This document shows, piece by piece, positions 20,389 to 43,297 of a stretch of 56,744 bases of DNA. The first letter of the stretch is position 1; each line of letters starts with the position of its first letter. A program made the position numbers and the translations under genes. The notes under the pieces were generated by a model, which had not been told where the DNA came from, did not search any database, and saw only the letters and a list, made by a program, of their open reading frames with translations. Origin of the DNA: Macrostomum lignano (Eukaryota); contig NIVC01002692.1 in NCBI GenBank assembly GCA_002269645.1, forward strand, positions 1 through 56,744, in the 5' to 3' direction.

Positions 20389-21549
20389 GCTGAGAGAGCA
20401 AGAGATTGCACTGCGCACCTACTGCAAGAGCCAAGAGGGAAACTATTGATTTACCTCCTCCCCGATGAGAACCAATGAGCTCACAGATTAAAAGTTGACC
20501 AAGCAACAAGGAATGATGGTGTACATTCTGCAGCACTTGTTGCGATGGAAATTTTCCTGATCCTGTACCCGCGGTCCGACAACCCCCAACCAAAAATTGT
20601 ATGGCAACGAAAAAACTTATAAAACCGGTAACAAGATAACAGAATATATAATTTCCGTTATCCAAAGTCATAACTGAAGCTGACAATTTTCAAGCCCAGA
20701 CATGCTTCCTGTCGAACGCTTGCTGTTCGTCTTCTTGGCGAGCATCCTGGTGGTAGTGACGCTGTTGTTCTACCAAGCCACCGCATCCAGCTCAGGCCAA
20801 AATGAACGCTACTACACTCAGGTGGGCACCGCTGGCGGCAACAGTTTCCCCCCAGCATTCAAAGTGCTCGAAGGCAGCAGCATTCGTTGCTCGATCTGGT
20901 GCTGGCAGACGCCGAGATGCCTCGGTTTCTACTGGACGGTGAGCTCGATGCTGTGCCAGCTGTTTAACGCTTCGGTCTACTACTGGAAACCGTCGTGGGG
21001 TGCCATTGCGGACCAGCAGAGCGAGTTCTACATGTACAACGCCAGTGAGTATTTCTTGTTCATAGATAGCGCGTGCGGATGTTCATAGATAGCGCGTGCG
21101 GACTAGCTGTACCTATGGGAGCTGAGAAATGAAGATGATTTCGCCTCCAGTTTAGGGAGTTCGGCCTTTGACTATTAACAAAATGACTTACAGAAGAAGT
21201 TCATTTTTAACAAGATATTCTCTGTTTAAGGCTACAACTGTATAACAGAATCTTCCGCGGCATCAATTGAAGACTTGTGTCTGGTAATTAGAAGCCGTCT
21301 CCGGTTGAAACGCCTGCTTCATGTGACGGGGGATGCCGCTTCTTCCTCAACAATTATTTCTAGGACTCGTTTTTAGGAAAATTCGATGTTACTTAAATTA
21401 GATTTACAGTAAACCTCATTTCGCGCGTCTCATTTCAGCTCCTCAGAGGCTGCATTTCTTCAACTGCAGCCAGATTTCAGCGGCCTATAGTGCCTTTTGC
21501 ACACGAGCCATGGACAACAACACGAATACGCATTTTTTTGATGGAGGTT

Positions 21550-21678
21550 AGTAGTATGGGATAACAGAACTCTGCCGCAGGAATTTCCGTGGAAAAGCCA
21601 TGGGCCCTAGTGAGTGAACATACGGCCCTATGTAAATCCATTGAGCGACTCTGCCGCAGGGCAGGCCATGGAAATTCC
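21550..21678 (+). repeat. Polinton left terminal inverted repeat (129 bp)
   Basis: Reverse complement of 37555..37683 with 5 mismatches by my count. Confidence 0.95.
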
Positions 21679-22299
21679 GTGAGACCTCCTAGTGAGAGTA
21701 CATTGGTGCAAGTATTTGCGAATGGGGTGGGGCTCCGCGGGAATTCCGTTAACCGCAATGAATGAGTATTGGCAAATGCGTGTTCTGCTACGACGGACAC
21801 AGGCGGTTCGGTTCATAAAACCAGGCAATGCTTTGCTTCTGAATGACATTTAATATTCCATCGGGTATCGTAAAAGGAGGAGGGGCGTGTCTTTATTTCA
21901 ATGATTACAATAAAATCAATTTGCAATTCATGTCTAAAATTTGAGCTACCAACTGTTGAAAAATCACTTGATTTTGGAATTTAAGGATTTTGGAATTTTG
22001 GAATTAATTGAAACTTTTGCCTATTAATTAGGCAAAAGTTTCAATAACAAGATGCTGCTTTAATAAGATTATAATAGCCAAGCATCTCCCCCTTTCTTGG
22101 GGTGGTGGGTGTGTTGCTAAATGGAATTGGACGCTCAATAATTATCAGTTTTATTGCTCCCCAGTCTGGTCGGGAGTTCCAGTTGGCGGCAAGTGCAAAG
22201 GAACTTTTGTACATGTATGCTTTCAATAGAGGCTCTGTATCTGGGTTTTCTAATAAAATTATTTTAAAAAACCGGTTTCTGAGACGGCTGGGTTACTGA

Positions 22300-22393
22300 C
22301 TGTAAACATAGCTAAGCTGTAAACATAGCTAAGCTGTAAACATAGCGGCTATGTTTTTATTAACACAGATTCGAATAAGCGAGGTATATAAGA
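22300..22393 (+). promoter_or_regulatory. Putative promoter of the left Polinton ORF: 3x 17-bp repeat containing TGTAAACA, then TATATAAGA
   Basis: ctgtaaacatagctaag at 22300, 22317 and 22334 (partial); TATATAAGA at 22385-22393, about 100 bp before ATG 22487. Confidence 0.6.
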
Positions 22394-22486
22394 CACCGTA
22401 TACTTGAATACGGGACATAAGTTTCTACTTCTAATTTGAATTTAACTTCAATTTGATTTTTCTATTCAAACATTAAAAAATTTGGA

Positions 22487-23833
22487 ATGAATAAATCGCG
22501 CTGCCCTTCATATGTGTACGAGGTATGCATTTCCTGCAACTCATGTGAGCTCGGTGGCTTAAAACGTCACAAAATGAAAAGCAGCTGCAATGTCAGTCGC
22601 TGGCTGCTTTGCCACGAGTGCCAGACGCGTGAGCTCTTTAATGTGCGCCAGCAAGTTCGAGCTCACAAAAACCACATTATTATTAACTGGAGCTCACCTG
22701 GAGATTTAAAACGAGCCCGCTTTGCTGCCTTGGAGGCTGCCCAGCGTCAAGAGCAGCTCAACATTATCGAGCGCAGTCGAGCACCGGTCAGCGCACTCAG
22801 CCAGACAATTCAGGGCGTCTTTCAGCAGCCTGATGAAGATTTTCAGCACGCTACCGATGCAAACTTTGATCTGCTTGCCGCTGCACTTGCCGCTGTGGAG
22901 CAGCAATCAGATTTTTTTGGTTCAACCGCTGCGCCAGCTGCTGATGCCGGCCTCCCAGCTGACGGTGCCGGCCTTCCAACTACTGATGCCGGCCTCCCAG
23001 CTGACGGTGCCGGCCTTCCAACTACTGATGCCGGCCTCCCAGCTGACGGTGCCGGCCTTCCAACTACTGATGCCGGCCTCCCAGCTGACGGTGCCGGCCT
23101 TCCAACTACTGATGCCGGCCTCCCAGCTGACGGTGCCGGCCTTCCAACTACTGATGCCGGCCTCCCAGCTGACGGTGCCGGCCTTCCAACTACTGATGCT
23201 GGCCTCCCAGCTGACGGTGCCGGCCTTCCAACTACTGATGCTGGCCTCCCAGCTGACGGTGCCGGCCTTCCAACTACTGATGCCGGCCTCCCAGCTGACG
23301 GTGCCGGCCTTCCAACTACTGATGCTGGCCTCCCAGCTGACGGTGCCGGCCTTCCAACTACTGATGCCGGCCTCCCAGCTGACGGTGCCGGCCTTCCAAC
23401 TACTGATGCCGGCCTCCCAGCTGACAGTGCCGGCCTTCCAACTGCTGATGCCGGCCTCCCAGCTGACGATTCCACTGGTTTTGCAGCTCCTTCGGAGTTG
23501 GATACTGCCTTCTTCGAGGATGTCGATTTGGAGCCTGTTGAGCTGGCAAATGAAGAAGCTGAGCAGCAACAGATGCCACCCTACAGGCCTGTTCCAGTCG
23601 CAGGAAAAAATATGGAGCAAGCCAGAATGATGGCAGAAGCAAGCCTATCCGATCTCCTGCGAGAATTCGAACCTCCTACTCCACCGGCTGCACCAGAAAT
23701 CCAAACCGGTGACATCCCAGTCGTAGAAGCCATGCCACCGATGCCACCGTCAGTCTGCATTCAGCTGGTACTACCGAGCAGAGTCGAGGGCGAGTATTTT
23801 ATTGACCTTGGGGAGGAACTCGCATTCGCTTAA
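22487..23833 (+). CDS. Polinton 448-aa protein: Cys/His-rich N-terminus with LxCxE (LLCHE), about 12.5 x 14-aa repeat, acidic/Pro-rich C-terminus
   Basis: Long ORF inside the TIRs, downstream of a TATA box; 42-bp coding repeat TTDAGLPADGAGLP at about 22935..23470. Confidence 0.75.
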   Translation: MNKSRCPSYVYEVCISCNSCELGGLKRHKMKSSCNVSRWLLCHECQTRELFNVRQQVRAHKNHIIINWSSPGDLKRARFAALEAAQRQEQLNIIERSRAPVSALSQTIQGVFQQPDEDFQHATDANFDLLAAALAAVEQQSDFFGSTAAPAADAGLPADGAGLPTTDAGLPADGAGLPTTDAGLPADGAGLPTTDAGLPADGAGLPTTDAGLPADGAGLPTTDAGLPADGAGLPTTDAGLPADGAGLPTTDAGLPADGAGLPTTDAGLPADGAGLPTTDAGLPADGAGLPTTDAGLPADGAGLPTTDAGLPADSAGLPTADAGLPADDSTGFAAPSELDTAFFEDVDLEPVELANEEAEQQQMPPYRPVPVAGKNMEQARMMAEASLSDLLREFEPPTPPAAPEIQTGDIPVVEAMPPMPPSVCIQLVLPSRVEGEYFIDLGEELAFA

Positions 23834-24532
23834 GTAGCTCTTAAAGTGTCCCAGTTCAAAGTATTTAAAAGTAGGGGAAACGAGATTTGTAGATTTTTAG
23901 GGTAAAACCAATGCATTCTACCCTGCATAAATATTAACTAATTACGTTGCACCTCATCGTGCTCATACAGGTTTCTCATAAACAAAGTGAAAAAGAAAAT
24001 AATTTAGGCTTACTGTTCAAACTTATTCTTATAATAAAGCTTTAATAAGCAGCTTTAATTAGTAGGGTGACTAACGAGCATGATTTTTTGCATTGCGAAA
24101 TGCTTTACCAGAAATATAATGGATTGATGGTTGCTTTTAATGAAAGCTTTTGCACTTTCTTGGACTTTGTTGAATTCATTACTTGTTTTTTTTCAATCAT
24201 GTGAATATCTTCGAAGAAGTTATAGGTTCACTCGCTTATAGAATTACCGTTAGGTTCACAGCATCTACTCAACTCTATGAGTATAATATGGGATTGATGA
24301 TCTATGATACCCAATGTTTAGAATGACATGAATTTGGTTTGTCAAGCATGACTTTGGTTAGATTCAATTTCTGCTCCATAGAGCTCTGAATGCTGGAAAT
24401 TTATCACTCCACTACATCTCTGACAGAATTGCACTTGGGTTAAATTTATCAAACAACACTTTTACACTGGAATTTCAGCAGCATTGAGTTCTTCACTAAA
24501 TGTCGCTCTATTTCTAATATTAATTCTCTGCA

Positions 24533-27500
24533 ATGGCCACCTCATCGAGTCAAGAGGACGAGCCGGTGGACCCAGCTGTCAGCCACGAATTTGGACCGAG
24601 TGGTAAGTTTTTTCATTCCATTGCTGGTTTTATGAACTCATGCATTTCTGTTTGTTGCATTCCTGTCTCTTAGCAACGGAATTATTTATATTTTTCTCGC
24701 CTACACAACAATTCCCAAATGGTTCCCAACAGGATTAAGCCGGAGAACTCACAATAATGAGACATTTTTATTCCTCATTAGATGAATTGACAAAAATGCG
24801 AAAGCAGAACTCCATCTATTTCTTCAATAATAACTCTTCAAATTCTTTTTTTACACTTATACGTAGCTCGTATTGATTAATAAAAAAATATTAAATCTAG
24901 ATATAAGGTAGTAGGATAAATAGTATACTCGTAAGTGTAAAAAAGGGCAATAAAATATTCGACTTCCATAACTCCCAGAGACATTTCTCATCATTTCCAC
25001 TTTCCATAAATATTTTTAATACTATCTTCCCTTCTTCAATTGTAGGACCTTCATTCACCCTGGCGTTAAAAACCAGCGCTCACGAAGATGTTCTTCAAGT
25101 TCATCGATTTACACCTGGAGCTGCCACTGAAACATTCGAGTTTCTCGATTTCTGCAAAATCGCAGTGCAGCAGTGTCTTGAAATTCGCTTCGACTCTTCG
25201 GATAATTGCTCTGTTAAAGCTCAGATCAAACTGAATTTGCGCATGGTCAGAGTGCAGGCGTCAGAAGCTGTCAAGGGGGAGGATAAATGGATGAGCACAC
25301 AACTCGGATTGGTGGTAGATATACAGGAGTTTGATGATTGGTGGAGACAGCAGTTTACAGAGCTGGAGCGCAAAGTCGATGTCTACAACACCAACGGTAG
25401 TGGCTGGATAATTGAAAAAATCAATTTTTTTGAACTTTACTCAGCTCTCGTCGAACGAGTTTCCTACTACACGGGGCATGCTGCGGAATTTATTCTACCG
25501 ACTCCACTTCTTCGGAAGAAGGCGGTTATTTGTCCTCCAAGCAATGGTGTAAATTGCTTTCTTTACGCATGCCTTGCTTTTCTGCACAAGGAAGACAACA
25601 AAATAAAGAAATCAGCGCAACGCGAGTCTTCCTACACTGACTGGCTGGATGAACTTAACATGAGTGGAATTGACTTGCCAATCAATGTCACCGACCTTTC
25701 CATTGTTGAGAGACTGAACCCGAGACTTTGCTTCACGGTTTTCATCTGGGAGAAAGAGAGCGCTCAAGTCCTCCGCTTGCCTACTGCAGCTACAATTAAA
25801 GATCGAGAAGTTGTTCTACTCTTATTTATTCCACCATCAGAAGACGAGGCCTCGGGTCATTGGTGTGCTGTTTCAAGCATCAACAGGCTTCTTAATAGCA
25901 AGGCAGCTCTGCATCGGCGGAAGTGGTGTGAGCGCTGCTTGCTGCCCTTTCATAGTGATGCAGCCTTTGAAGAACACAGCCGAGCTCCTTGTCAACCTGG
26001 AGTGATCAACGTCAAGGAAGAGTTGCCAGATGAAAGGAATAATATTCTCCGATTCTCATCATGGGAAAAAACAATTAGTCCGCCATTTGTTGTTTACGCC
26101 GACTTCGAAGCATTGAATGCTCCATGCCAAGAAGATTCGATTGCTGGTATAGCAACGAAGAAGTTAACTGAGCACATTGCTGTTGCTGCTGGCTACATCG
26201 TGCTGCACAGAGAAGGGATGACTGGTCTAGCGCCCAGAGGAGCGGATGATAAAGTGAGCACTTTTGTCAGCGACGATCCTAATAAGTGCATTTCCGATTT
26301 CCTGCAATCGCTGGAGAAGCTCGCTCGTGAAGTTTACGGCTGGAACACGGAGTTCAGTCGACAAGCAGCGATAAGAACAGAGATGGCAGGGCGACAGTTC
26401 AGAGAAGCCACAGCTTGCTGCTATTGTAGAAGCGAATTCACGGAAGGGTCCAATAAACATTGGGATCACGACCACCTCAGCGGAGAATTTCGGGGAGCTG
26501 CGTGTGCTGATTGTAATATGAAGGCCAGACTAAAGAGGTCTTTCCTTCCCGTCGTGTTCCACAATTTCAAGGGGTACGATCTCCATCTCATGATGTCATC
26601 CGCTTTGGGTCTGATGGAGGGTTGGAAAATCTCCGTCATCCCTCTGAATCCAGAGCAGTTTCTGTCGATGAAAATCGAATTTAAAATCGGCGAGTATGAG
26701 AGTGAGGGCAAGATCAAGCCTTTAAATTTTACTATTCAGTTCATTGATTCGAATCAATTTCTTAATGCCAGCCTCTCACAGCTCATCAAAAATTTACCAG
26801 AGGCTGAATGTCGTATCACTAGTCGCCTACGCAGCAGCAGATTCCCACTGCTATCATCCGAAGTGCTTTTCAGCAAGGGAGTTTTCCCGTATGACTATCT
26901 TAAAAATTCAGACGTGCTGAAGGATGCCGTGCTTCCCAGCCAAGAGAGCTTCTACAATGCTCTGACTAAGAGCCACTGCACCAACTCTGACTATGAGCAT
27001 GCTCAACGCGCCTGGCGAGAATTTCAGGTTTCAAATCTAAAAGAGTACATGCTGTGCTACCTCGAGCTCGACATCAGGCAGTTGGCTGATATTTTTGAAA
27101 ATTTTCGCAAGATCAGCATGCAAGAGGATGGCCTTGATCCAGTCCATTTTATTTCGACACCAGGCCTATCATTCGCTTCGGCATTGAAATCCATCAAGTC
27201 AGGGATTGAACTGCTAACAGATGCGCAGATGTATTCGCTGTTTGAGCGCGGCATTCGCGGCGGCATGTCGTTTGTTAACATCCACAAAGTGCAGGCTACC
27301 TCAGCAGCGGGCGCCAGCACTGGTGTTGACAGCAATGAGGATGTTGATGGTGGCACTCCTACTATTCATGCTGGCCTCACCGAGCTTCTTGCTGTGGATG
27401 CAAACAACCTGTATGGACAGGCGCTCACTATGAACTTACCAGTCGGAGGATTCCGTTGGCTGGACGATGATGAGCTGCTTTTGTGGACTGAAGATCGCAT

Positions 27501-28688
27501 TCGAGGACTCAAGCTAACCGATCCACTCGCCTACCTCTTTGATGTTGACCTTGAGTATCCCCCAGAGATTCACGAAACCACCGAAGACCTACCATTTGCA
27601 CCGGAAAAGGCTGCCCCGAATTTCAGGGAATTTCCTGAATACATGCAGCAGCTGTGGGAAAAGGTCGGTACGGAGAACTCCACCTATCATCCGACAGAGA
27701 AGCTGATGCTCACTTGTCACGATAAGCCTTCCTATGTGGTTCATTCCTCTATTTTGGCGTTCTACCTGAACCATGGAATGCGGGTTAGACGCATCAATCG
27801 CATGATTGAGTTTCACCAAGAGCCTCTCTTTGCTGCCTACGTCGAGAAAAATAGCCAGAAGCGGGCTGCAGCGAAAACCAACTTCGAAAAGGATTTCTAC
27901 AAGTTAAAGAATAACGCGCTATTCGGCAAAACTATGGAGAATGTGCGAAAGCGGCGTGATATTCGAGTCTGCACCAACGTGGAAAAGGTAAAGGTACTGC
28001 TTGCCAAGCCGACAATTACCAATTTTATCATAATTACTGATTCACTAAGCGTTTTGGAACTGCAAAAGACAAAATTAAAGCTCGATCGGCCTATTTTTAT
28101 CGGGCAATGCGTCCTAGACTTTTCGAAAATGATTATGTACGAGCTGTTTTACGACAAACTGAAGCCCTGGATAGAGAACGATGGAGGTGTCATCAAGCTA
28201 TGCGGTGGTGATACCGATTCTTTCTTTCTCTCAATCAGCAACATGAGCGTTCAGTCTAAAGTTCTACCGCTGTTGAAGTCGAAGCAGCTGCTCGACACTT
28301 CAAACTATCCTCAAGAGCACGCGCTATTCTCGAATGATTTAAAAGCGCGACTTGGCTGCATTAAGGATGAAGCAGCCGGTGCTCGCTTTGAGGAGTGGCT
28401 GCTCCTAAGGCCGAAGCTTTACTCATTCAAGGCGAGTAGCCAAGCCGCGGAAAAGAAGAAGGCCAAAGGAGTTCAAGGATGCATTGTTAAGAAAGAGCTG
28501 GCTCACAGTGACTACCTAAGGGTGTTCAATGAGCTCTGCAGCCATTCTGTCGTTGTTCATCGTATTGCCAGCATCCATCACCGACTGTACACTTTGCAGC
28601 AGCGGAAGTGTGCCTTAAGCATTTGGGAAGACAAGCGCGCTTGGCTGAGCCCTAACTATAGTCTCCCATTTGGTCACATTCGGCTGCT

Positions 28689-28757
<69 letters not shown>

Positions 28758-28845
28758 GCAACAGCAGCAACAACAACAACAACAACAACAACAACAGCAG
28801 CAGCAACAGCAGCAGAAATCATCAAAACGGCGCCGACTACTTTGA
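24533..28845 (+). CDS. polB: Protein-primed family-B DNA polymerase, predicted join(24533..24602,25046..28845)
   Basis: Exo I YADFE, endonuclease-VII-like insert (CCYC..DHDHLSGEFRGAACADCN), Exo II HNFKGYD, DANNLYG, KLKNNALFGK, GDTDS, PKLY; polyQ tail and KRRR. Frame open from 25046; phase-1 intron GTAAGT..TTGTAG. Confidence 0.92.
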
Positions 28846-29405
28846 AATTGAATAATGAGTACAACAAGCTTGCTAAACAAAAACAATAATTTCTTTGCGA
28901 TTTCAAAGTTTCTTTCTTTGACATTGAATAAAGGTTAACCGCTAATCTAAATAGGATTTTTTCCAAATGCAATAAAAACTTTGATCATCTGCTGAGGCTA
29001 GCAACAATTTTTTGCTTCACAATATTTACTTACAATTGCGCGATGATGATAATGAAACCAATGCTTCGTTAGTGGTGGTGGTGGTGTTTGCGGTGATGGC
29101 ATGTGAGAGTTTTATTTTTTTCTAATTTTACCTGTACTTTGTGGTTGGTTTTTTGAATCCTGATATTGCTTTATAAGTTTTAATATATTCCATCTGCTTT
29201 TGGACTATTTTTTCCTATTTTTGTAGTGGTTTATCTGCTTGCTCGTATTTGCTTTTAGCTTGCTATTTGTTTATCTCTACAAGATGTTCACCACTGGTTT
29301 TTCATTGCAATTAAAAATGAAGACAAAAAAGCTAGTGCATGAGAGAGAATTAATTTGAATATTTTAATTAAACAAGCCGCGATTTATTCTTTCTTTTTAT
29401 TTATT

Positions 29406-29972
29406 TCAGTTTGAAAGCAAGCAAGCTAATAGGGAACGGTCTGATTGTAGCATATGCTTAGACTTTGCTCCGCTGAGCACAAATGAGCCATTGTGAAAAA
29501 GCGTACACTTGCAGTATTGAAGCTGACAAACTAAAGCAGTAAAACTTTCAGGTTCATATTTCGCATTCGGTAGCACTTCACAGAGGTTTCTTAGTGATAG
29601 AGCCTTGGGCAAGTCTATTTTTCCATAAGCAGTAATAGTCTTAATTCGGACACAAACGGATTGACGAGGCAGCAGTTGAGGCGGAACTCTGCGATGCAGC
29701 ATAGCCACGAAGCGACGGGCAGCCTTGACTGAGGCCGAGTAGCTCCGGGCGCCACAGATACTCAGTTGTCCAGTCGGATAGAGCAACAGAGTCACTCTGG
29801 GATTCCGCATCCTCTTGATGAGCACTCGGGGCCAGACGGGGCGATAGATGACATGAGCCATGCTGAGAGCCAGTTCCCGCAGAGGCAACTGGGCACCCCT
29901 GCCTCCAGCCAGCCTCAGATCCACGCCGCCAACCAGATTGGTCACTCGCAGGGCTGTCGCAGGTGTACTCAT
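29406..29972 (-). CDS. TBP: Polinton-encoded TATA-binding protein homolog (188 aa, both core repeats)
   Basis: VTNLV..VDL, YRP.WP.V.I.RMRNPRVTLLLYPTGQL.ICGARS...S..AARRF; then YEPESFTAL...CTLFHNGSFVLSGAKS. This matches the TBP core consensus in both halves. Confidence 0.88.
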   Translation of the reverse strand: MSTPATALRVTNLVGGVDLRLAGGRGAQLPLRELALSMAHVIYRPVWPRVLIKRMRNPRVTLLLYPTGQLSICGARSYSASVKAARRFVAMLHRRVPPQLLPRQSVCVRIKTITAYGKIDLPKALSLRNLCEVLPNAKYEPESFTALVCQLQYCKCTLFHNGSFVLSGAKSKHMLQSDRSLLACLLSN

Positions 29973-30486
29973 TTAGAGAGTCCTTTCTGTCAGTGGTGCT
30001 GTCTTTGAGAGCCTTTGAGTGGTGCGGGCACACCTCGCTTCTTAAGTTGATACAGAACTTTGGCTTCAGCCAGTTGTAGTAGAGCAATACATTTTTCACT
30101 GCACAACCAGTATCAGATGCTTGAATCAAAGGTGATCCCAGATCCTCTAGGTTGTACACCTGTCTGCCAAGCAGCTCAGTCAGAAAGATGGACTTTTTCA
30201 CCCCGCTTGTCCAGGTGGGGCCGTAAGCAATGTTTAGAATGTCATTTGCCAAATGCATGTACGATCGGGATCCATCTGTCCACTTGAAATGATGCAAATT
30301 CTTTGAGAGCTTTCTGTAATGCACCTGCATCTCAGGTGAGATTCGCTCCCATGAGAACGGAGAGGCGTACACGTGATGAGTGATATGGTAACTGCCTGCC
30401 CGGACTTGGGCAATGGCTAGCTCCTTCACAACGAAATCTCTGCTCGATCTCTCGCGTGGGAAGCCTTGGAAGTCAATATAGTTCAT
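29641..30486 (-). CDS. Polinton accessory protein, possibly DEDD/DnaQ-like fold (first about 165 aa); 3' part overlaps the TBP ORF
   Basis: YIDFQGF..FVVKELA, HHFKWTDG, VYNLEDLG, CAVKNV..Y.WL pattern recalled from Polinton hypothetical proteins; fold call is inference. Confidence 0.6.
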   Translation of the reverse strand: MNYIDFQGFPRERSSRDFVVKELAIAQVRAGSYHITHHVYASPFSWERISPEMQVHYRKLSKNLHHFKWTDGSRSYMHLANDILNIAYGPTWTSGVKKSIFLTELLGRQVYNLEDLGSPLIQASDTGCAVKNVLLYYNWLKPKFCINLRSEVCPHHSKALKDSTTDRKDSLNEYTCDSPASDQSGWRRGSEAGWRQGCPVASAGTGSQHGSCHLSPRLAPSAHQEDAESQSDSVALSDWTTEYLWRPELLGLSQGCPSLRGYAASQSSASTAASSIRLCPN

Positions 30487-30526
30487 GATCGGATGGTTTC
30501 AAGATGCCTGATATCGGGAAGCCGAC

Positions 30527-31219
30527 TCAGTTCCCCTTCTTAAATAGTTTTTTCCTGTTCAGCTGTAGCCAAGCTCTCCCACTCCCGAATCCTTTAACTG
30601 TATGATGAGCAGGGGCGGCCTCTGGAGAAACAGCAGGTTTAGAAATTAGCTGCCTAACTGACTTTCCTATGGCCGAAGCTGGGATGTTAAGCTTTTTATC
30701 TTGGAGCAATGAGACAAACTCACTCCAGCCCACCGGCTCGCTGGCACATTTCGAATCCCTCACGGCACTGTGAAACAAATCCAGGATGTTTGAGGAGGGT
30801 ATTGTCTTCCCACAAATTTGCGCCTCGCCATTTTCGGACACCCGAATCAGAGAAGGATTGCCAGATAGGATGGCCCATAGACTGCGGGCTCTCGCTTTAA
30901 ACTTCTGCGGCACGGATTGGGTGATCTTTTCCCCCCAGCTGCTTGGTGCAATATCAGTTTTCAGCATCTTTGCATCACTCGCAGGTACCGCATCATCCTT
31001 TCCAGTCCGCTTGCGCTTGGCCAGCAAACTCTTCATCGCATCATGGTACATGGCAGCTTTCACATCGTCTGGGCAATCCTCGGCAAGCAAAATATCATTG
31101 CATTTCCTCTGCGCATATCTCACAGCAGTGTCGAGTTCAGACTCAACTGGCTTCAAATTCTGTGTGAGCATGTCGTATTCTGACTTGGGGATCAGAACCA
31201 TTTCTGAGAACTTATTCAT
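30527..31219 (-). CDS. Polinton hypothetical protein (230 aa)
   Basis: Co-oriented ORF in the gene block; MVLIP..YD.L and G..I..SNILDL motifs resemble recurrent Maverick proteins. Confidence 0.75.
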   Translation of the reverse strand: MNKFSEMVLIPKSEYDMLTQNLKPVESELDTAVRYAQRKCNDILLAEDCPDDVKAAMYHDAMKSLLAKRKRTGKDDAVPASDAKMLKTDIAPSSWGEKITQSVPQKFKARARSLWAILSGNPSLIRVSENGEAQICGKTIPSSNILDLFHSAVRDSKCASEPVGWSEFVSLLQDKKLNIPASAIGKSVRQLISKPAVSPEAAPAHHTVKGFGSGRAWLQLNRKKLFKKGN

Positions 31220-31559
31220 TTTGTTTCTTTTTCTTCACTAGCTTTATTAGAATGTAGAGAATTTTGATAAAACCCGTATTTAGCAGATCCGCAGCTCTTC
31301 TATGTGTAGAAATTTTGCGGATTATTTGCTTTTGCTTCACTAGCGCTGCCTTTTCAGTGAGTGAGAACGACAGAGTGTTTTGCAATAGGTTATAGCAGGC
31401 CTCAATGAGAAATTCATGTACTGCTTTTGGACCCGCTCTGATCAACAGACGTTTAAAGCTGATGGAATATTTCGGTGAGGCGAGAACATCAAACAAACTT
31501 TCATGTGAGTCGAATGTTTCCATTATCATTAGTGTTGCAGAATATAGAGCAAATGGCAA
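31212..31559 (-). CDS. Small basic Polinton protein (115 aa) with amphipathic C-terminus
   Basis: LIEACYNLL.N.L.F....K..L.K.K.IIRKI pattern typical of the small gene next to the Polinton ATPase. Confidence 0.7.
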   Translation of the reverse strand: MPFALYSATLMIMETFDSHESLFDVLASPKYSISFKRLLIRAGPKAVHEFLIEACYNLLQNTLSFSLTEKAALVKQKQIIRKISTHRRAADLLNTGFIKILYILIKLVKKKKQNE

Positions 31560-31576
31560 AATCTCGGCTGTTATTC

Positions 31577-32230
31577 TTAAGTGTAAACCAGGTGGGGTCG
31601 CTGATTGGGCAGGATTCGAGCCCGGACCCGCAGCTCATCAGGGGTGGAAGGGTGAAAATCCAGGAGCAGGTAGGCTCCCCTGCCGTGCGATGTCACGTGC
31701 TTGAACACTGACAGCAGAAAGCCGGGCTTCTCAGCAAAACACTGCCTGCCCAGCGCCGCAATCTGCAGCTGGTCTCTGGGGTTCTTCATGATCACAAAGT
31801 ACATCGCATTCAGACTCATTGTTCGCAACTCCTTCCCTTTAAAAAATACATTTTGGGTCAGCATAACCAGAAAGCAGGGCAAATGATGGGCAATTCCAGT
31901 GAAAACATTTCGCATTGCAGCAGAATTGGAAGTTTCTTCAATCAGGTCATCAAATACAACCAGGTCATTGGGTCTCAGTGCGGTCTCGATACTGCTGGGA
32001 AATCCCTGCTGCAAGTGCACGCCGAGACTGCTGAGCTCAGAGTGTGCTGCTTGTGAAATTCCGTAGTACCACAGAACTCTCCCAGGCTTCACATCAAACA
32101 TGACATCCTTGTATTGTATCAGATGTTTCACGAAGGTTGTCTTTCCTGCATTTGTAGGCCCGCTGACAATCATGCAGCTTCCTTGTCGCAGGCGCACATC
32201 ATAACAGTTTATCCGCTCACGTGTTTCCAT
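31577..32230 (-). CDS. DNA packaging ATPase (A32/FtsK-HerA type)
   Basis: Walker A GPTNAGKT, Walker B LVVFDDL, LTQN, RTMSLNAMY, YLLLDFHP. Confidence 0.93.
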   Translation of the reverse strand: METRERINCYDVRLRQGSCMIVSGPTNAGKTTFVKHLIQYKDVMFDVKPGRVLWYYGISQAAHSELSSLGVHLQQGFPSSIETALRPNDLVVFDDLIEETSNSAAMRNVFTGIAHHLPCFLVMLTQNVFFKGKELRTMSLNAMYFVIMKNPRDQLQIAALGRQCFAEKPGFLLSVFKHVTSHGRGAYLLLDFHPSTPDELRVRARILPNQRPHLVYT

Positions 32231-32263
32231 CGCCTGTTGAGCTAAATCCTTGATTTTAAAAGT

Positions 32264-32782
32264 CTAATTAAATTTATTTTTTCTTAAGCAACTCTCAAAC
32301 CTTTGCAGAATTCTTTCATTCAAGTGGCTCTGCTGATTTGCATGGAGGTGCCGCAGAACCCACTCAAACGAGCGCTTGAAACGAAACTTTTGATAGGCAA
32401 ACAAGAGACAGAACAAACCGCATTTAGCAGAGTTGCAGCTCTGAATTCGATTCACATTGCTACGTAAGTAGAATGGAGAATACCAAAAGGATTTCAGTGC
32501 TCTGTGAATGATCTCTAAAGTGCTTGAGTCCCAGCCCAGAGAGTTAAAGAGTTCTATGGAATTCTCCTTATTGGCATAACAAACCACCCAGTGACCAAAG
32601 GACGAGCCGTACTGAAGCAGAAAGAAAATAAACCTACATCGAGATAAATTTCTTTTGAGAGTTGCTCGCTGAATAAAGTTTAAAGCATAAGATGTTTTAT
32701 TTATTGAATTCAAGACAATAATTAAATAGTTATTTTGTGGCAAAAAGCTTTTAGCCAGTTTAAGCAGTTGAAAAGCATCCAT
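32264..32782 (-). CDS. Adenain-type cysteine protease
   Basis: GHWV, FNSLG, QS.NSAKCGLFCL (His, Asn/Asp, Gln, Cys order of adenoviral proteases). Confidence 0.9.
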   Translation of the reverse strand: MDAFQLLKLAKSFLPQNNYLIIVLNSINKTSYALNFIQRATLKRNLSRCRFIFFLLQYGSSFGHWVVCYANKENSIELFNSLGWDSSTLEIIHRALKSFWYSPFYLRSNVNRIQSCNSAKCGLFCLLFAYQKFRFKRSFEWVLRHLHANQQSHLNERILQRFESCLRKNKFN

Positions 32783-32805
32783 ATTAGCGTTGCGCCAGCG
32801 TACTC

Positions 32806-34088
32806 CTAGGATGGAAAATCTAGCAGAATCTCCCTGTGCTTCGTGACCTCAATCAGTGAGTCATACAGGCACATAACAATCAGAGATACAGGCTCCTCCA
32901 GGGCCTGTCGGAAGCGAATCTCCAGCCGCAAATTTCCCTCCTTCTGTCCGTACCACAGGGCCGCTCCCTCAGGCGTGAGATCGAATGCGAAAGCTGTGTT
33001 GCCGTTGGAGAACAACTGGTAGGGGACCCACGGAACCGAGTTGGTAGGGCTGGCAGACTGACAGCTTTTCAGGTAGTGCAAGTACTCTCTCACGAATGAA
33101 TTATTCTCAGGTGCAAATGCAGCGTGGCACATGGCTTCACCACCTTTCTTTAGTGCTAGCTGGCTGAGGTTGAAGCTCTGGAACTCGAAGGGGCTGGAAT
33201 GGTGATGGCCATTGAAGGCTCGGTGGTTCACGAAGACCAGCATAACGAACTTCGGCAGTTTGCCATGGGTGAATCCTTCAATGTTTTTTGACTGAATTCC
33301 CTGGGGTAGAATGAAGTTTTGCATTTCGGTTCGCTCGATGGGGTAAAGTGCGTTCTGATTGGTAAGTCCCTGCTCATGCGCTAGGCTGATGTGAGGCGCC
33401 ACTTTGACTCGGCGCAGGTTCAGAATACAATGGGAAATTTCAATTCGGTAGGCTGTGTTGTTCTCATCTGGGGTTCGGATGGCAAATGCAGCTTCACTGG
33501 GCATCAGCTTGATGTGCAGGTGTAAATTGTTCAGCAGCAGAACAGGACACTGGAAGATGTCGCTGAGCAGCGGTCCCGCATACTCCACCCAGCGGGACTC
33601 CCTGTGTCTCTCGGCATGCCCCTCAGCAGCAGTTTCGGGTTCCAGGAATCCGGCGGGGTAGAAATTTAACTGCTGAGCATCGGATGAGCTCATGAGAGCT
33701 TTTAGGTAGGCATGGTAGGGGTAGAGCTGGTCTCCGCCAGAGACAATGCGCTGGTTGATGCTCACGATTACATCTGAGAATGCCGTAGATAGGACAAAGT
33801 TTTCTGGGTGCACCCCACTGTCTCTGCGCTCAGTGACAACTCCATCGGCATTCCGAACCTCCTCCCTCATCAAAGCCCCGCCAAGCCGGACTAGGCGACA
33901 GCGAATATACAGGAATGAGCTCAGCAGATCAGTGTACTCATCAGCCGATGGATGGCAGTCGAATTCAATTGGTGAGTTAGTAGAAATAGAGTTCACGGGG
34001 TGAATATCAACATACGTGATTTTTCAATAGCAGTCTGCAGCACGGGGGACTTGAACAAATCGAGTCTCGGGTTGAATCCGTAAGCCAT
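32806..34088 (-). CDS. Major (double jelly-roll) capsid protein; 1-nt deletion at about 34017 in this copy
   Basis: Near-identical to intact 427-aa ORF 42012..43295; acgtgat here versus acgttgat there; position and size fit the Polinton major capsid. Confidence 0.85.
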
Positions 34089-34090
34089 TG

Positions 34091-34507
34091 CTATGAGAGT
34101 GAGTCCAGAACACGCTTCACAGTTTCTTTGCCCACTTTTTGTTTTCTTTTGCCTGTTTTCTTGGCCTGTGTTTTAGTCGTTCTTTTCTTAGGTTGCTTGC
34201 TTGTTCTGACCTTGCTTGTTTTGCGTGCTTCGCCACTTTTTTTCTTCTTCTTCATGCGCACCTGCTTTTTATTCACCTTTTTAGCCTGTCCTTGATTTCC
34301 TATGTTTCTATTACTCGTACTATTGCTTCTGCTGCTACTGCTGGTTTGTACAGGCTTTGATGCTAATGATGATGATGATGTTATGGAAGGTGCTGGAGGA
34401 GGCTGGTAAGTCATTATTCCAGGAAAACTCCCGCAGCCATAGAGCATGGACTTTTCATTTCCCGTCCGAGTCCCTGAATACTGCCGAATCAGCTGCTGAT
34501 AGTTCAT
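34091..34507 (-). CDS. Lys/Ser-rich basic protein (138 aa), candidate DNA-condensing core protein
   Basis: Strongly basic C-terminal half; sits between the two capsid genes. Confidence 0.7.
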   Translation of the reverse strand: MNYQQLIRQYSGTRTGNEKSMLYGCGSFPGIMTYQPPPAPSITSSSSLASKPVQTSSSSRSNSTSNRNIGNQGQAKKVNKKQVRMKKKKKSGEARKTSKVRTSKQPKKRTTKTQAKKTGKRKQKVGKETVKRVLDSLS

Positions 34508-35331
34508 TGCATTGGTCTCTCACGTATCAGAATTGTGAGCAGAACAGGGCTGCCGCTATGAGCAGTCAGTGAGAAGCCAAAGATGTCTCGCAGTTGAACT
34601 CGAATGCTGTGTAGAAAATTTGTTTTCTGAATGGGGAAGAAAACTGTTTTCTTAAACACTTTGCTCCAGTAGCTTCCCCATCCGGCTTCAGGATTCATGT
34701 TCACAGTTCGCAGCAGGGAATTCCAGTTGCAATTAGTTGACTCCACAATGCTACAATGCACGTTGATCAGATTGGTGGGCGGGCAGCCAATGTGGTACAT
34801 GGAAACTTGGCGCCCAGGTGGAATTTTCACGGACTGATTTCCGAATCCCAGCCACTGCAGAATTTTACTTGATGGAAGGAATAATTCTGCTCGAGCCGTG
34901 TTGTTGAGCACTACCGTTCTCAATTCTTGGATCTCAAACTTTATGCCAATATCTCTAGCGCTGCTCCGCCCCATTAAACCAGACTCATCAGCCTCCATTT
35001 CAGACTCCCTCTCACTCATTGCATCGAAGAACAGTGACTCAGAGTTGGCCAGCAGCTCATTCATGCGCTCCACCAACTCCTCCACTCTAGCAAAGCGTCC
35101 GGGTTGAAGAACCAAGGCCTCATGCTCTCTTCCATCTGAGACAGTGAAGCAGTAAGGCTCGTCAACATTGAACCATGCAGCAGGCAGATGGATTTCAGCC
35201 AGACCTGCCTCATAGTCCACATTTCGATCCAAGTAAATAGGTGAAGGCAGGTGAAAATGAAAGTCAGCAGGAGTACCTTCAGCATTTTCGCTGTTAATGA
35301 TGATGCTTCTCATAATTGGGAATGGCTGCAC
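34504..35331 (-). CDS. Minor capsid (penton-like) protein; likely ATG start at 35313
   Basis: NSE......PADF.F.LP.PI.L....YEAGLAEI.LP, I.VHCSIVE, LLR.V, I.VQLRD..G pattern of Polinton minor capsids. Confidence 0.8.
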   Translation of the reverse strand: MQPFPIMRSIIINSENAEGTPADFHFHLPSPIYLDRNVDYEAGLAEIHLPAAWFNVDEPYCFTVSDGREHEALVLQPGRFARVEELVERMNELLANSESLFFDAMSERESEMEADESGLMGRSSARDIGIKFEIQELRTVVLNNTARAELFLPSSKILQWLGFGNQSVKIPPGRQVSMYHIGCPPTNLINVHCSIVESTNCNWNSLLRTVNMNPEAGWGSYWSKVFKKTVFFPIQKTNFLHSIRVQLRDIFGFSLTAHSGSPVLLTILIRERPMQ

Positions 35332-35343
35332 AATGTCGGCATC

Positions 35344-36411
35344 TTACACTTTTCTTAAGTCCTTCTCATCCACCCAGTCAGTGGAGTCGTAGCCGGCCCA
35401 CTTGACCAGATATCGGATCTTTCCCTGCCGCTTCTCAGTCTTCAAAATCTTTTCAATCACATACAGCCGCTGCGACTCCGGAACGGCCTGCAGTTCATGC
35501 TCGTGAAAAAGCCCACGAATCTCTTCTCCTTTCATGTCTTTTATCTTGTACATGTAGGGATAATGCTTTGGAGCTCTGGACACCACCGTGTACACTTCTT
35601 CGCTCCAGTTGGCCTTGTACCCTTTTCTAAAAAGCCTGGGTGCATTGGAAATCCGCACAGACTGGTTTTCGCTGAACTTTGGCTTTCCCAGCTTTTCCAC
35701 AGTTTCAATCGCTTTCCCGTCATATAGGCTCATCCAGACCTCGGACTCGTTCTCCTGGCTGACATTCGTTGGGGCCATTCGTATGCTTCTGTGGTATGTT
35801 TTGTTGTAGGACTTCACTAGCTTAGGCAACACATCAAGCCAATGCAGAGTGCTGTTGTGAGTGAAGTAGCGCCACATTTTGCTCTTTAAAGTTCGGTTCC
35901 ATCGTTCAATGACAGCCGCCTTCTGCTCACTGTTGGTTGGGAATGCCAGGATTCCCCTTTCCATACAGCATTGGCGAAAAGTAGAGTTGATAAACTCTTT
36001 CCCCTGATCAGTGCGAACAGTGCGCGGTTGCCGCTTTGAACTTCTTAATATGCTCTCGAATGCCGACTTCACTTCAATAGAAGACTTGTTCTTTAATGCC
36101 CTCGCCCATCCGTACTTGGACAGCACATCAATGCATGTTAGAATATACCTGTAGCCGTTATTATACTTGGAAAAAGGAATCATCTCCACCAGATCCAACT
36201 CCCATTGGTCATCAATACTTCGAACTATGATTGGGGCCCTCGGATAATTCCTCCTTGCTGGCTTATGTAATGTGTAGACTGTCTGATCGTTAAGCCAGTT
36301 TTTCGCAGCTTTTTCACTCACTCGGATACCCTGCGTGCGAACTTCATTAATAAATTTATTGCAGCCAGAAAAGCTTGCTGGCTGCTCAGGGTTAAAGTAA
36401 ATCTTTTCCAT
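35344..36411 (-). CDS. Retroviral-like (rve) integrase with C-terminal chromodomain
   Basis: WELDLVEM, RTDQGKEF, ERWNRTLK (DDE triad), YN.TYHRSIRMAP, YVIEKILK....YLVKWAGY...WV. Confidence 0.95.
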   Translation of the reverse strand: MEKIYFNPEQPASFSGCNKFINEVRTQGIRVSEKAAKNWLNDQTVYTLHKPARRNYPRAPIIVRSIDDQWELDLVEMIPFSKYNNGYRYILTCIDVLSKYGWARALKNKSSIEVKSAFESILRSSKRQPRTVRTDQGKEFINSTFRQCCMERGILAFPTNSEQKAAVIERWNRTLKSKMWRYFTHNSTLHWLDVLPKLVKSYNKTYHRSIRMAPTNVSQENESEVWMSLYDGKAIETVEKLGKPKFSENQSVRISNAPRLFRKGYKANWSEEVYTVVSRAPKHYPYMYKIKDMKGEEIRGLFHEHELQAVPESQRLYVIEKILKTEKRQGKIRYLVKWAGYDSTDWVDEKDLRKV

Positions 36412-36631
36412 TTTTAATTAGAGAAAAAATTAAACTCATTTCGCATTCTTAAGTTCACCAGTAAACTAGCATAACTATAGAGAGAGATGCTTATTTTATT
36501 TTATTTTTAATTTTAAACGAGCTCATTTAATAGGACATTAATGAATAAGCTGAAAAAGCTGGATAAATAGAACTGTTAGACATCAATACAGATGGCATAG
36601 CAATGTCCACGCATAGTCACTTAAAAAGTTA

Positions 36632-37360
36632 TCAAGCACTTTTGTCTGCGTCACCATCCTCTCCACCATTGATCACTTTGGGCAACTTGATTGCATTTTG
36701 CCTGCGCAGGGGCCACGGAAGCTTTCGTTTGTGACAGCCGCTGTTGCCGAGCCCTGAAGCAGCACGGAACCGGTACCACAGTGGGTCGTGCGACAGGTCG
36801 CTGTCTTGCTGGGGTATGCGCCCGACTGAAGTCTCTGGCAGAACAGGCGAGCTGGTTGCATTGTCCGACTCGACGATGCGCAGCCTCTTCTCTTCTTCTT
36901 CTTCTTCTTCGCTGACCGGCAGAGTTTCTTGGCCCTCATGCTTGATGTCCTCGGCCTCCAGCTGATACTCACTCTCCGCCGACTTCTCTCGCAGCTCGTT
37001 GTCGATCCACTCGGCCTTCTTCCAGAGTTCTCCCCATAGACGGGGAGTCAGCGCCACTGAGTTCCGCCGCAGATAATCCTCTGTACAGTCTTCCGGCAGG
37101 CGCTTCAGCCAGATGATACCCCTGCTGACCACAACGAGTTTATCAAAGCCAAGCTTGACTGTGACGCTGTGCCGATTGACTGCCGAGTGCACAAGCTGGC
37201 GTTTCAGCTGCTTCAACTTCTCCCATTGGTATGCATTGAGGTTAAAGCCAGGGATGCCCGCTCTGAGCCCGCTTTCAGAGGAGAAGAAACGTCGGATTGC
37301 AATAAAGCGATGACCTTCGTACTCTTGCACTTGAACTTTGAAGCCGTCACAGAGATCCAT
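36632..37360 (-). CDS. PC4/Sub1-like ssDNA-binding protein with two PC4-like repeats and acidic tail (242 aa)
   Basis: KVQVQEYEGHRFIAIRRFF....RAGIPGFNLNAYQWEKLK matches the PC4 core; second SVALTPRLWGELWKKAEWIDNEL; poly-Glu. Confidence 0.75.
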   Translation of the reverse strand: MDLCDGFKVQVQEYEGHRFIAIRRFFSSESGLRAGIPGFNLNAYQWEKLKQLKRQLVHSAVNRHSVTVKLGFDKLVVVSRGIIWLKRLPEDCTEDYLRRNSVALTPRLWGELWKKAEWIDNELREKSAESEYQLEAEDIKHEGQETLPVSEEEEEEEKRLRIVESDNATSSPVLPETSVGRIPQQDSDLSHDPLWYRFRAASGLGNSGCHKRKLPWPLRRQNAIKLPKVINGGEDGDADKSA

Positions 37361-37433
37361 TAATGATATGTTTCTTTAAGAAGGATGCACAAAAATTCCT
37401 TTCGTCATGAAGCCAACCTCAAAAAATCGCCCA

Positions 37434-37442
37434 TCTTATATA
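37434..37442 (-). promoter_or_regulatory. TATA box (TATATAAGA) upstream of the PC4-like gene
   Basis: tcttatata on + strand, about 75 bp upstream of ATG 37360; same 9-mer as at 22385. Confidence 0.55.
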
Positions 37443-37554
37443 TACTTTCTAGGCGGAGTGGGGTGGGTGCAATAATGAGTTTCCTTCAGTACATATACCA
37501 GCATGCGCTTTGTTATCTCACCGGGCCCCCATGCCCACCCGATGTGCCCCCCAT

Positions 37555-37683
37555 GGAATTTCCATGGCTTTCCCTGCGGCAGAGTCGCTCAATGGATTTA
37601 CATGGGCCCGTATGTTCACTCACTAGGGCCCATGGCTTTTCCACGGAAATTCCTGCGGCGGAGTTCTGTTATCCCATACTACT
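37555..37683 (-). repeat. Polinton right terminal inverted repeat
   Basis: Ends ...cccatactact followed by TSD gaggtt. Confidence 0.95.
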
Positions 37684-40275: not shown

Positions 40276-40417
40276 CTCGCAATCCTCGGCAAGCAAAATA
40301 TCATTGCATTTCCTCTGCGCATATCTCACAGCAGTGTCGAGTTCAGACTCAACTGGCTTCAAATTCTGTGTGAGCATGTCGTATTCTGACTTGGGGATCA
40401 GAACCATTTCTGAGAAC

Positions 40418-40765: not shown

Positions 40766-40782
40766 AATCTCGGCTGTTATTC

Positions 40783-41436: not shown

Positions 41437-41469
41437 CGCCTGTTGAGCTAAATCCTTGATTTTAAAAGT

Positions 41470-41988: not shown

Positions 41989-42011
41989 ATTAGCGTTGCG
42001 CCAGCGTACTC

Positions 42012-43295: not shown

Positions 43296-43297
43296 GC

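What the first reader, a model, noticed from the sequence alone, without database searches (positions are those of the whole stretch)
21544..21555. Polinton inserted in a lectin exon, with the empty site preserved 32 kb downstream
GAGGTT flanks both ends of the element. The paralog at 53338-53343 has one GAGGTT inside the open frame FFDGGSCIHT. The insertion separates the PAN exon from the canonical fucose-binding motif H-x26-RxD-x4-R. The pre-insertion state is therefore directly readable, and a candidate immune lectin is knocked out by an endogenous virus.
Basis: seen in the sequence. Interest (0 to 1): 0.75.

Follow-up and report, generated by a model that had tools for sequence, protein, structure and literature searches.

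The report
Polinton insertion splitting a flatworm lectin gene
A 16-kb virus-like Polinton (Maverick) transposon sits inside the fucose-lectin exon of a Macrostomum-type flatworm gene, and a near-identical neighbouring gene copy still shows the unoccupied site; this is a clean textbook insertion, not a new kind of biology.

Summary
The sequence observation is exact. GAGGTT (21544-21549 and 37684-37689) flanks a 16,134-bp element (21550-37683). Removing the element and one GAGGTT gives an exon 404/404 identical to 53233-53636.

The element is a Polinton/Maverick. It has 132-bp inverted ends with an AGTAGT...ACTACT motif and a 6-bp duplication. It encodes a protein-primed polymerase, an rve integrase, an adenain-like protease and a P-loop ATPase. 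It also encodes a double-jelly-roll capsid protein and a probable penton. Accessory genes are a divergent TBP and a PC4-like protein. Every gene reads in one frame except the capsid gene, which has one frameshift as assembled.

The host gene has two exons and encodes an F-type lectin. The closest protein is from Macrostomum lignano. The insertion lies inside the lectin domain and leaves a stop codon right after the junction.

- No PAN domain is detectable.
- "Immune" is untested.
- The empty copy has a one-base frameshift in exon 1 as assembled.
- A 9.2-kb, 99.8% tandem duplication (31054-40275 / 40262-49481) was missed. It creates a third lectin 3' fragment and may be an assembly artefact.

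Divergent outer flanks favour paralogs homogenised by gene conversion over mis-joined alleles. Verdict: ordinary, a new member of a known kind.

The parts
21544..21549 (.). Left target-site duplication, GAGGTT
21550..37683 (.). Full-length Polinton/Maverick element, 16,134 bp
   Evidence: Bounded by the inverted repeats and the duplication; its removal restores the exon 404/404
21550..21681 (+). Left terminal inverted repeat (starts AGTAGT). Contains repeated GGAAWTTCCGT motifs.
37552..37683 (-). Right terminal inverted repeat (ends ACTACT)
   Evidence: 132 bp, 95.5% identical to the left repeat
37684..37689 (.). Right target-site duplication, GAGGTT
22487..23833 (+). ORF of 448 aa with a Cys-rich N-terminus and 12.7 copies of a 42-bp (14-aa) repeat; function unknown
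   Evidence: the N-terminus is weakly conserved in L006
25165..28845 (+). [quoted passage not shown]
   Evidence: PF03175 7.6e-14 and PF02945 7.3e-07; one frame against the L001 polymerase
29406..29972 (-). Divergent TATA-binding-protein homologue (accessory gene). It overlaps the 3' end of the upstream ORF.
   Evidence: PF00352 1.3e-22; PDB TBPs 1e-16; conserved in L001, L006 and L007
29641..30486 (-). ORF of 281 aa, conserved in related elements; function unknown
30527..31219 (-). ORF of 230 aa, conserved in related elements; function unknown
31212..31559 (-). ORF of 115 aa, conserved in related elements; function unknown
31577..32230 (-). P-loop ATPase at the position of the Polinton genome-packaging ATPase
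   Evidence: Only weak P-loop hits in Pfam, PDB and NCBIfam; 82% identical to the L001 gene
32264..32782 (-). Adenain-like cysteine protease
   Evidence: PF00770, 4.1e-05, 23.8 bits against a cut-off of 21.3
32806..34088 (-). Major capsid protein gene (double jelly-roll). Broken as assembled: one frameshift, no stop codons.
   Evidence: Relatives are 427 aa; two frames against L001; AF2 model pLDDT 61.8; Foldseek hits to adomavirus LO7, virophage and giant-virus capsid proteins, 1e-15 to 1e-9
34091..34507 (-). Lys/Ser-rich basic protein of 138 aa, a possible DNA-condensing core protein
34504..35331 (-). Probable minor capsid (penton) protein, 269-275 aa
   Evidence: Position between integrase and capsid gene as in L001-L004, L007 and L008; 59% identical to L001; fold not confirmed, pLDDT 31.5
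35344..36411 (-). Retrovirus-like (rve) integrase with a C-terminal chromodomain
   Evidence: PF00665 1.8e-12; PF00385 3.3e-05
36632..37360 (-). PC4-like ssDNA-binding or coactivator-like protein (accessory gene)
   Evidence: PF02229 8.2e-05, below the cut-off; the same family is recorded for the L001 homologue
20702..21044 (+). Lectin copy 1, exon 1: signal peptide plus a four-Cys module
21439..21549 (+). Lectin copy 1, exon 2, 5' part: the start of the F-type lectin domain
37690..37982 (+). Lectin copy 1, exon 2, 3' part: H-x26-RxD-x4-R motif through the stop codon
52497..52838 (+). Lectin copy 2, exon 1: C5 run instead of C6, a frameshift as assembled
53233..53636 (+). Lectin copy 2, exon 2, uninterrupted. 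The empty site GAGGTT is at 53338-53343.
40276..46889 (.). Partial second copy of the element: its 3' 6.6 kb, from inside the 230-aa ORF to the right inverted repeat. The capsid gene here (42012-43295) is uninterrupted.
46890..49481 (+). Duplicate of the right host flank: GAGGTT at 46890-46895, a third copy of the exon-2 3' part at 46896-47188, the 3' flank and the start of the satellite
   Evidence: 0 differences from 37684-40275
39647..40275 (.). 23-bp satellite (TCACCATCAAGCATCCTCAGCTA), 27 perfect units. It is cut off at the duplication junction.
48853..51505 (.). The same 23-bp satellite (61 perfect units) grading into a 40-bp variant, lying between the lectin copies

Best explanation
A Polinton/Maverick (adintovirus-like) element integrated into exon 2 of one of two tandem F-type lectin genes of a Macrostomum lignano-type flatworm genome. 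Its rve integrase made cuts staggered by 6 bp at GAGGTT. Repair duplicated the hexamer on both sides of the 16.1-kb element. The insertion lies inside the lectin domain, four codons before the His of the fucose-binding triad. The reading frame now ends at a stop codon supplied by the first bases of the element. Copy 1 can therefore encode at most a signal peptide, a Cys-rich module and about 28 residues of lectin domain. The second gene copy downstream was never occupied and shows the pre-insertion sequence. The two genes are old tandem paralogs. Their transcribed part (about 1.9 kb) was recently homogenised, most likely by gene conversion, which is why the empty site matches base for base. 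Shown: the element boundaries, the duplication, the gene content, the exact empty site, the premature stop and the flank divergence pattern. Inferred: the integrase mechanism (from family knowledge), the recent date, gene conversion, and paralogy rather than allelism. The 9.2-kb near-identical tandem repeat of the element's 3' half plus the lectin 3' flank is either a later real rearrangement with a breakpoint in the satellite or an assembly join error. I rate these two about equally likely.
For: Boundaries, inverted repeats and duplication. Empty site rebuilt 404/404. Polinton genes: polymerase, protease and TBP, rve integrase with chromodomain, capsid fold. Synteny with related elements L001 (Logan), L006 (M. 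lignano GCA_002269645.1) and L007/L008 (JGI). The end motif (AGT)2//(ACT)2, the 6-bp duplication and the ~16-kb size match the published criteria for intact Mavericks (PMC8097293). Lectin: a two-exon model gives an open 747-nt CDS; F-type lectin hits are FBP32 3cqo 7.8e-24, 2j22, 2j1r and 1k12 and PF22633; the motif is present. Host: the best protein hit is the M. lignano 'FTP domain-containing protein'. Premature stop. Paralogy: the copies are 99.5-100% identical only over 20664-21549 and 37684-~38690. Identity falls to 60-85% with many indels outside that core. Beyond it the sequences are unrelated, with different satellites upstream and different sequence downstream. The older independent M. 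lignano gene model P0001 also reads straight through FFDGGSCIHT and carries the copy-2-type Asn.
Against: Everything rests on a single assembly. No independent contig for this locus could be retrieved. The suspicious 9.2-kb tandem duplication lies between the two lectin copies, so the region may contain join errors, which weakens the inference that both copies lie on one chromosome. The inverted repeats differ at 6 of 132 positions, so a very recent date cannot be read from them. The capsid frameshift in the full copy and the exon-1 frameshift in lectin copy 2 may each be real or consensus errors. No expression data exist for either lectin copy.
Confidence: 0.8

Rival explanations
1. The two lectin loci are the two haplotypes (or homeologous copies) of one locus that the assembler placed in tandem. 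The empty site would then be an allele, and the insertion a heterozygous polymorphism.
For: The core is almost identical: 2 differences in 886 bp on the left, 0 in exon 2, and 7 events in ~1 kb on the right. A 99.83% tandem duplication of 9.2 kb lies between the copies. Its junction sits inside a perfect satellite, a typical place for a false join.
Against: Outside the 1.9-kb core the flanks are only 60-85% identical with many indels. Further out they are not homologous at all: satellite GAGGTCAGGAGTGAGGCTAGTCA lies upstream of copy 1 and TCACCATCAAGCATCCTCAGCTA upstream of copy 2, and the latter satellite lies downstream of copy 1 but not of copy 2. Alleles would be expected to stay collinear. 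The sharp step from ~100% to ~75% identity at the gene borders fits gene conversion between paralogs.
Confidence: 0.12
2. The 9.2-kb repeat (31054-40275 / 40262-49481) is a real tandem rearrangement. A template switch or unequal exchange between the 23-bp satellite and the interior of the element copied the element's 3' half and the lectin 3' fragment.
For: The two copies differ at 14 alignment columns, 10 of them substitutions, which is not the homopolymer-indel pattern of raw consensus noise. One copy has the capsid frameshift and the other does not. There is short sequence similarity at the junction (GCATCCTCAGC in the satellite, GCAATCCTCGGC in the element).
Against: All 14 differences lie in the element part and none in the 2.6 kb of host flank plus satellite. 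Eight of them fall in two small clusters, as expected if polishing used reads from other copies of the family. The first copy stops after 27 perfect satellite units, where contigs often end.
Confidence: 0.45
3. Copy 2 once carried the element and lost it by precise excision or by conversion from an empty copy. The 'empty site' would then be restored rather than ancestral.
For: Gene conversion clearly acts on this gene pair.
Against: One clean GAGGTT with no footprint and an intact frame is what a never-occupied site looks like. Removing a 16-kb heterology by conversion is far less likely than conversion of the short flanks. No mechanism for precise Polinton excision is established (family knowledge).
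Confidence: 0.03

Closest known systems
Polinton/Maverick elements, in particular the 'intact' Mavericks defined by Barreat & Katzourakis 2021 (PMC8097293)
   Same: Terminal inverted repeats with the (AGT)2//(ACT)2 end motif and a perfect 6-bp target-site duplication. Size is 16.1 kb against a published range of 12.7-24.6 kb. The genes form two oppositely oriented modules. One module holds the protein-primed polymerase. The other holds the integrase, minor and major capsid proteins, protease and ATPase.
   Different: The host is a free-living flatworm, and my literature search found no report of Polintons in Macrostomum. The accessory genes differ: a divergent TBP, a PC4-like protein, a basic 138-aa protein and a 14-aa-repeat protein. 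The polymerase carries an Endonuclease-VII-like finger.
Adintoviruses and adinto-like MELD viruses (Starrett et al. 2021, PMC8502044)
   Same: The same core gene set. [quoted passage not shown]
   Different: Here the element is integrated with a duplication in a host exon. Nothing in the data speaks to a free form. There are no relatives of its capsid protein or TBP in IMG/VR.
F-type lectins (fucolectins): striped bass FBP32 (3cqo), eel agglutinin (1k12), Streptococcus fucolectin-related proteins (2j1r, 2j22)
   Same: Sequence similarity over the whole domain (E 7.8e-24 to 2.4e-10). The H-x26-RxD-x4-R motif has the same spacing.
   Different: There is a single lectin domain behind a signal peptide and an unclassified four-Cys module. 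No binding or expression data exist. An immune role is only an analogy.
Paralogous empty-site validation of transposon insertions (a standard practice in transposon annotation)
   Same: A duplicated copy of the target lacking the element, with one copy of the duplicated hexamer, defines the exact ends.
   Different: Nothing. This is a very clean instance, made possible by gene conversion between tandem genes.

Membership tests
Polinton/Maverick | Terminal inverted repeats with the AG.../...CT (AGT-type) end motif | tested here: met
   132 bp, 95.5% identical, AGTAGT...ACTACT; motif as described in PMC8097293
Polinton/Maverick | 6-bp target-site duplication | tested here: met
   GAGGTT on both sides and single at the empty site
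Polinton/Maverick | [quoted passage not shown] | tested here: met
   PF03175, 7.6e-14, 51.9 bits against a cut-off of 25.8
Polinton/Maverick | Retrovirus-like (rve) integrase | tested here: met
   PF00665, 1.8e-12, 47.8 bits against a cut-off of 32.6; a chromodomain hit lies just below its cut-off
Polinton/Maverick | Adenovirus-type cysteine protease | tested here: met
   PF00770, 23.8 bits against a cut-off of 21.3
Polinton/Maverick | Double-jelly-roll major capsid protein | tested here: met
   AF2 model from a 6-sequence alignment, pLDDT 61.8 (moderate). Foldseek against BFVD gave 74 hits at E<=1e-3, led by a Cotesia bracovirus protein, adomavirus LO7, and virophage and giant-virus capsid proteins. 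The gene carries one frameshift as assembled.
Polinton/Maverick | Minor (penton) capsid protein | tested here: inconclusive
   An ORF of the right size and position is conserved in all relatives, but there is no family hit and the single-sequence model is unusable, pLDDT 31.5
Polinton/Maverick | FtsK/HerA-type genome-packaging ATPase | tested here: inconclusive
   A Walker-A P-loop protein of 217 aa sits at the expected position. Only sub-threshold hits were found, including a faint one to Pox_A32.
F-type lectin (fucolectin) domain | Sequence membership in the domain family | tested here: met
   PF22633, 38.7-40.1 bits against a cut-off of 27.8; PDB FBP32 7.8e-24
F-type lectin (fucolectin) domain | Fucose-binding motif H-x(26)-R-x-D-x(4)-R/K | tested here: met
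   Regular-expression match in the exon-2 product
F-type lectin (fucolectin) domain | Fucose binding; a role in immunity | not testable with these tools
   No biochemical or expression data are available
   No Pfam family at E<=1 apart from the lectin domain. PDB phmmer on the exon-1 module gave only noise, E>1.

The most novel reading that the evidence does not exclude
The element belongs to a flatworm-associated Polinton lineage that is still transcriptionally and transpositionally competent in the Macrostomum germline. On this reading the lineage carries its own highly divergent TBP and a PC4-like factor as a small, self-supplied transcription-initiation module. TBP is conserved across relatives whose capsid proteins are only ~40% identical. 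The lectin insertion would then be a young, possibly still polymorphic event.
Probability: 0.3. Interest if true: 0.55.

Novelty: new member of a known kind. Interest (0 to 1): 0.33.

Why it matters
This locus gives base-exact ends, duplication and target for a near-intact Polinton in a regeneration and transgenesis model flatworm. I found no published Polinton description for that animal. It can serve as a reference copy for annotating the family, as a marker for insertion polymorphism, and as a case study of gene conversion between tandem lectin genes. It also flags a probable assembly problem, the 9.2-kb duplication, that anyone using this region should know about. It does not change how Polintons or lectins are understood.

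Tried and rejected
- Exact-protein look-ups for the lectin ORF, the integrase and the M. lignano protein P0001 found no independent contig of this locus. Paralogy against allelism therefore could not be tested on a second assembly.
- The PAN/Apple reading of exon 1 was rejected.
- IMG/VR scans with the capsid alignment and with TBP found no relatives.
- The single-sequence structure of the putative penton was unusable, so no fold search was run on it.
- The ATPase could not be assigned to the FtsK/HerA family by Pfam, NCBIfam or PDB sequence searches.
- tRNA and Rfam scans of the window were empty.
- The two satellites flanking the lectin copies show no similarity to each other, so they do not mark one duplicated unit.
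- I considered dating the insertion from the divergence of the inverted repeats and rejected it. Polinton inverted repeats need not be identical at integration.
- Literature searches found no paper on Polintons or Mavericks in Macrostomum. For TBP in this virus group they found only a figure-legend mention.

Full report
**1. The observation**

The window reads ...TTTTTTGATGGAGGTT|AGTAGTATGGGATAACAG... at 21534-21566. At 37664-37695 it reads ...CTGTTATCCCATACTACT|GAGGTTCTTGCA.... The sequence between the two GAGGTT hexamers (21550-37683, 16,134 bp) begins and ends with a 132-bp inverted repeat that has 6 mismatches.

At 53338-53343 there is one GAGGTT in an otherwise identical context, inside the open frame FFDGGSCIHT. 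The join 21439..21549 + 37690..37982 is identical to 53233..53636 at all 404 positions. A regular expression finds H-x26-RxD-x4-R in the exon product.

**2. The insert**

Pfam assigns five genes:
- a family B "organellar and viral" DNA polymerase with an Endonuclease-VII-like finger (25165-28845, +);
- an adenovirus-type protease (32264-32782, -);
- an rve integrase with a chromodomain (35344-36411, -);
- a TATA-binding-protein homologue (29406-29972, -);
- a PC4-like protein (36632-37360, -).

The 396-aa ORF at 32806-33996 has 427-aa relatives in Logan, JGI and ENA assemblies. A model built from that alignment has moderate confidence (pLDDT 61.8). It matches double-jelly-roll capsid proteins of adomaviruses, virophages, giant viruses and a Maverick-derived bracovirus protein, with E from 1e-15 to 1e-9.

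A P-loop ATPase (31577-32230) sits where the packaging ATPase is expected. A 275-aa ORF (34504-35331) sits where the penton is expected. Neither could be assigned to its family by my tests.

Barreat & Katzourakis use three criteria for intact Mavericks: the AGTAGT...ACTACT ends, the 6-bp duplication and a size near 16 kb (PMC8097293). This element meets all three. It is a Polinton/Maverick.

Relatives with the same gene order occur in three places:
- L001, a 14.4-kb Logan contig;
- L006, in the M. lignano assembly GCA_002269645.1;
- L007 and L008, in two JGI metagenome contigs.

Against L001 every gene of the full-length element aligns in one frame except the capsid gene. That gene has one frameshift and no stop codons as assembled.

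**3. The host gene**

The best protein match of the exon is the Macrostomum lignano "FTP domain-containing protein" (90% identity). A two-exon model gives an open 747-nt CDS of 248 aa:
- exon 1, 20702-21044, with a GTGAGT donor;
- an intron ending TTTCAG;
- exon 2, 21439-21549 joined to 37690-37982.

The protein has a signal peptide, a four-Cys module and one F-type lectin domain. The domain covers residues ~123-246 and matches FBP32 (3cqo) at 7.8e-24, plus 2j22, 2j1r and 1k12. It also matches PF22633 above its cut-off.

The insertion therefore lies inside the lectin domain, in the same exon, four codons before the His of the motif. It is not between a PAN exon and the lectin. No PAN/Apple similarity is detectable in exon 1. 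In copy 1 the frame reads ...FFDGG and then meets a stop codon supplied by the first bases of the element. The fucose-binding half is cut off.

**4.

(a) Segment 31054-40275 is repeated in tandem at 40262-49481 with 99.83% identity.
- The repeat includes the 3' 6.6 kb of the element, the right GAGGTT, the lectin 3' fragment (a third, identical copy at 46896-47188) and the first 27 units of a perfect 23-bp satellite.
- The junction cuts a satellite unit and jumps into the 230-aa ORF of the element.
- The copies differ at 14 alignment columns. All 14 are in the element part, and eight fall in two small clusters. None lies in the 2.6 kb of host DNA.
- The partial copy has an uninterrupted 427-aa capsid gene.
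- This pattern fits a real rearrangement and an assembly or polishing artefact about equally well.

(b) The "empty" copy 2 has a C5 run in exon 1 where copy 1 has C6. That is a frameshift as assembled. The older, independent gene model P0001 carries the copy-2-type Asn (FLANIL). It reads in frame through this run and through FFDGGSCIHT. That suggests a consensus error and gives independent evidence for an empty-site copy.

**5. Paralog or allele**

The two loci are 99.5-100% identical only over 20664-21549 and 37684-~38690. That core runs from about 40 bp upstream of the ATG to about 700 bp past the stop codon. Identity then drops abruptly to 60-85% with many indels.

Further out the loci are not homologous. 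A different 23-bp satellite lies upstream of each copy. The satellite downstream of copy 1 is absent downstream of copy 2. This is the signature of older tandem paralogs whose transcribed part was recently homogenised by gene conversion. Collinear alleles would not look like this. I put the allele or mis-join rival at about 0.12. Only read-level data can settle it.

**6. Mechanism**

- Shown: the element ends, the duplication, the gene set, the exact empty site and the premature stop.
- From family knowledge: the rve integrase makes cuts staggered by 6 bp, and gap repair creates the duplication.
- Inferred: the insertion is younger than the last conversion event between the copies (0 differences in exon 2). 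The near-complete coding capacity suggests a recent event. The divergence of the inverted repeats (4.5%) cannot be used as a clock.

**7. Comparison and novelty**

This is a new member of a known kind, and paralogous empty sites are a standard way to validate transposon ends. The most interesting side observation concerns the TBP gene. It is very divergent: the best PDB hits are archaeal TBPs at 1e-16. It is conserved at the same position in relatives whose capsid proteins are only ~40% identical. The adintovirus paper already lists a TBP-like accessory gene in some adinto-like contigs (PMC8502044), so this is a variation rather than a first. I found no paper describing Polintons in Macrostomum.

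**8. Verdict**

It is imprecise on PAN, on "immune" and on the intactness of the paralog, and it misses the 9.2-kb duplication. Interest is modest (0.33).

Noticed in passing
window 29406-29972 (-); L001 8213-8764; L006 1250-1822; L007 6366-6749: A highly divergent TBP gene is a conserved accessory gene of this Polinton lineage, even in relatives whose capsid proteins are only ~40% identical. In the window and in L001 its 5' part overlaps the 3' ~320 nt of the upstream 280-aa ORF in another frame.
   Followed up: partly
window 31054-40275 and 40262-49481: A 9.2-kb tandem duplication at 99.83% identity, with its junction inside a perfect 23-bp satellite. All differences lie in the element part and none in the host part. 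It may be an assembly join or polishing artefact.
   Followed up: partly
window 52497-52838, compared with 20702-21044: Exon 1 of the 'empty' lectin copy has a C5 run where the occupied copy has C6. As assembled, neither lectin copy in the window encodes a full protein.
   Followed up: yes
window 21569-21749 and 37550-37664: The inverted repeats carry palindrome-like GGAAWTTCC(G/A)T motifs, three at the left end, within a 79-bp subrepeat. They are candidate protein-binding sites at the element ends.
   Followed up: no
window 22934-23468: A 42-bp repeat in 12.7 copies at 98% identity encodes a 14-aa repeat (DAGLPADGAGLPTT) inside a 448-aa element ORF with a Cys-rich N-terminus. The polymerase ORF ends in a long poly-Q tract (28689-28828).
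   Followed up: no
window 1365-3559 (+): Three consecutive ORFs in different frames carry successive pieces of a reverse-transcriptase domain (RVT_1, sub-threshold). This looks like a decayed retroelement.
   Followed up: partly
window 5150-6323 (+): ORFs with VHS (3.5e-17) and weak GAT similarity, probably exons of a TOM1/GGA-like host gene. A 51-bp repeat lies between them.
   Followed up: no
window 10089-10270 and 16015-16190: Two ~180-bp segments, each internally palindromic, are inverted copies of each other (84% identity) and lie 5.7 kb apart. They may be the ends of a foldback-type element that encloses a 34-bp satellite (10883-12111).
   Followed up: no
window 18809-20376; 39647-40275; 48853-51505: Long, very homogeneous 23-bp satellites of two unrelated sequences bracket the lectin genes. 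The second grades into a 40-bp variant.
   Followed up: partly
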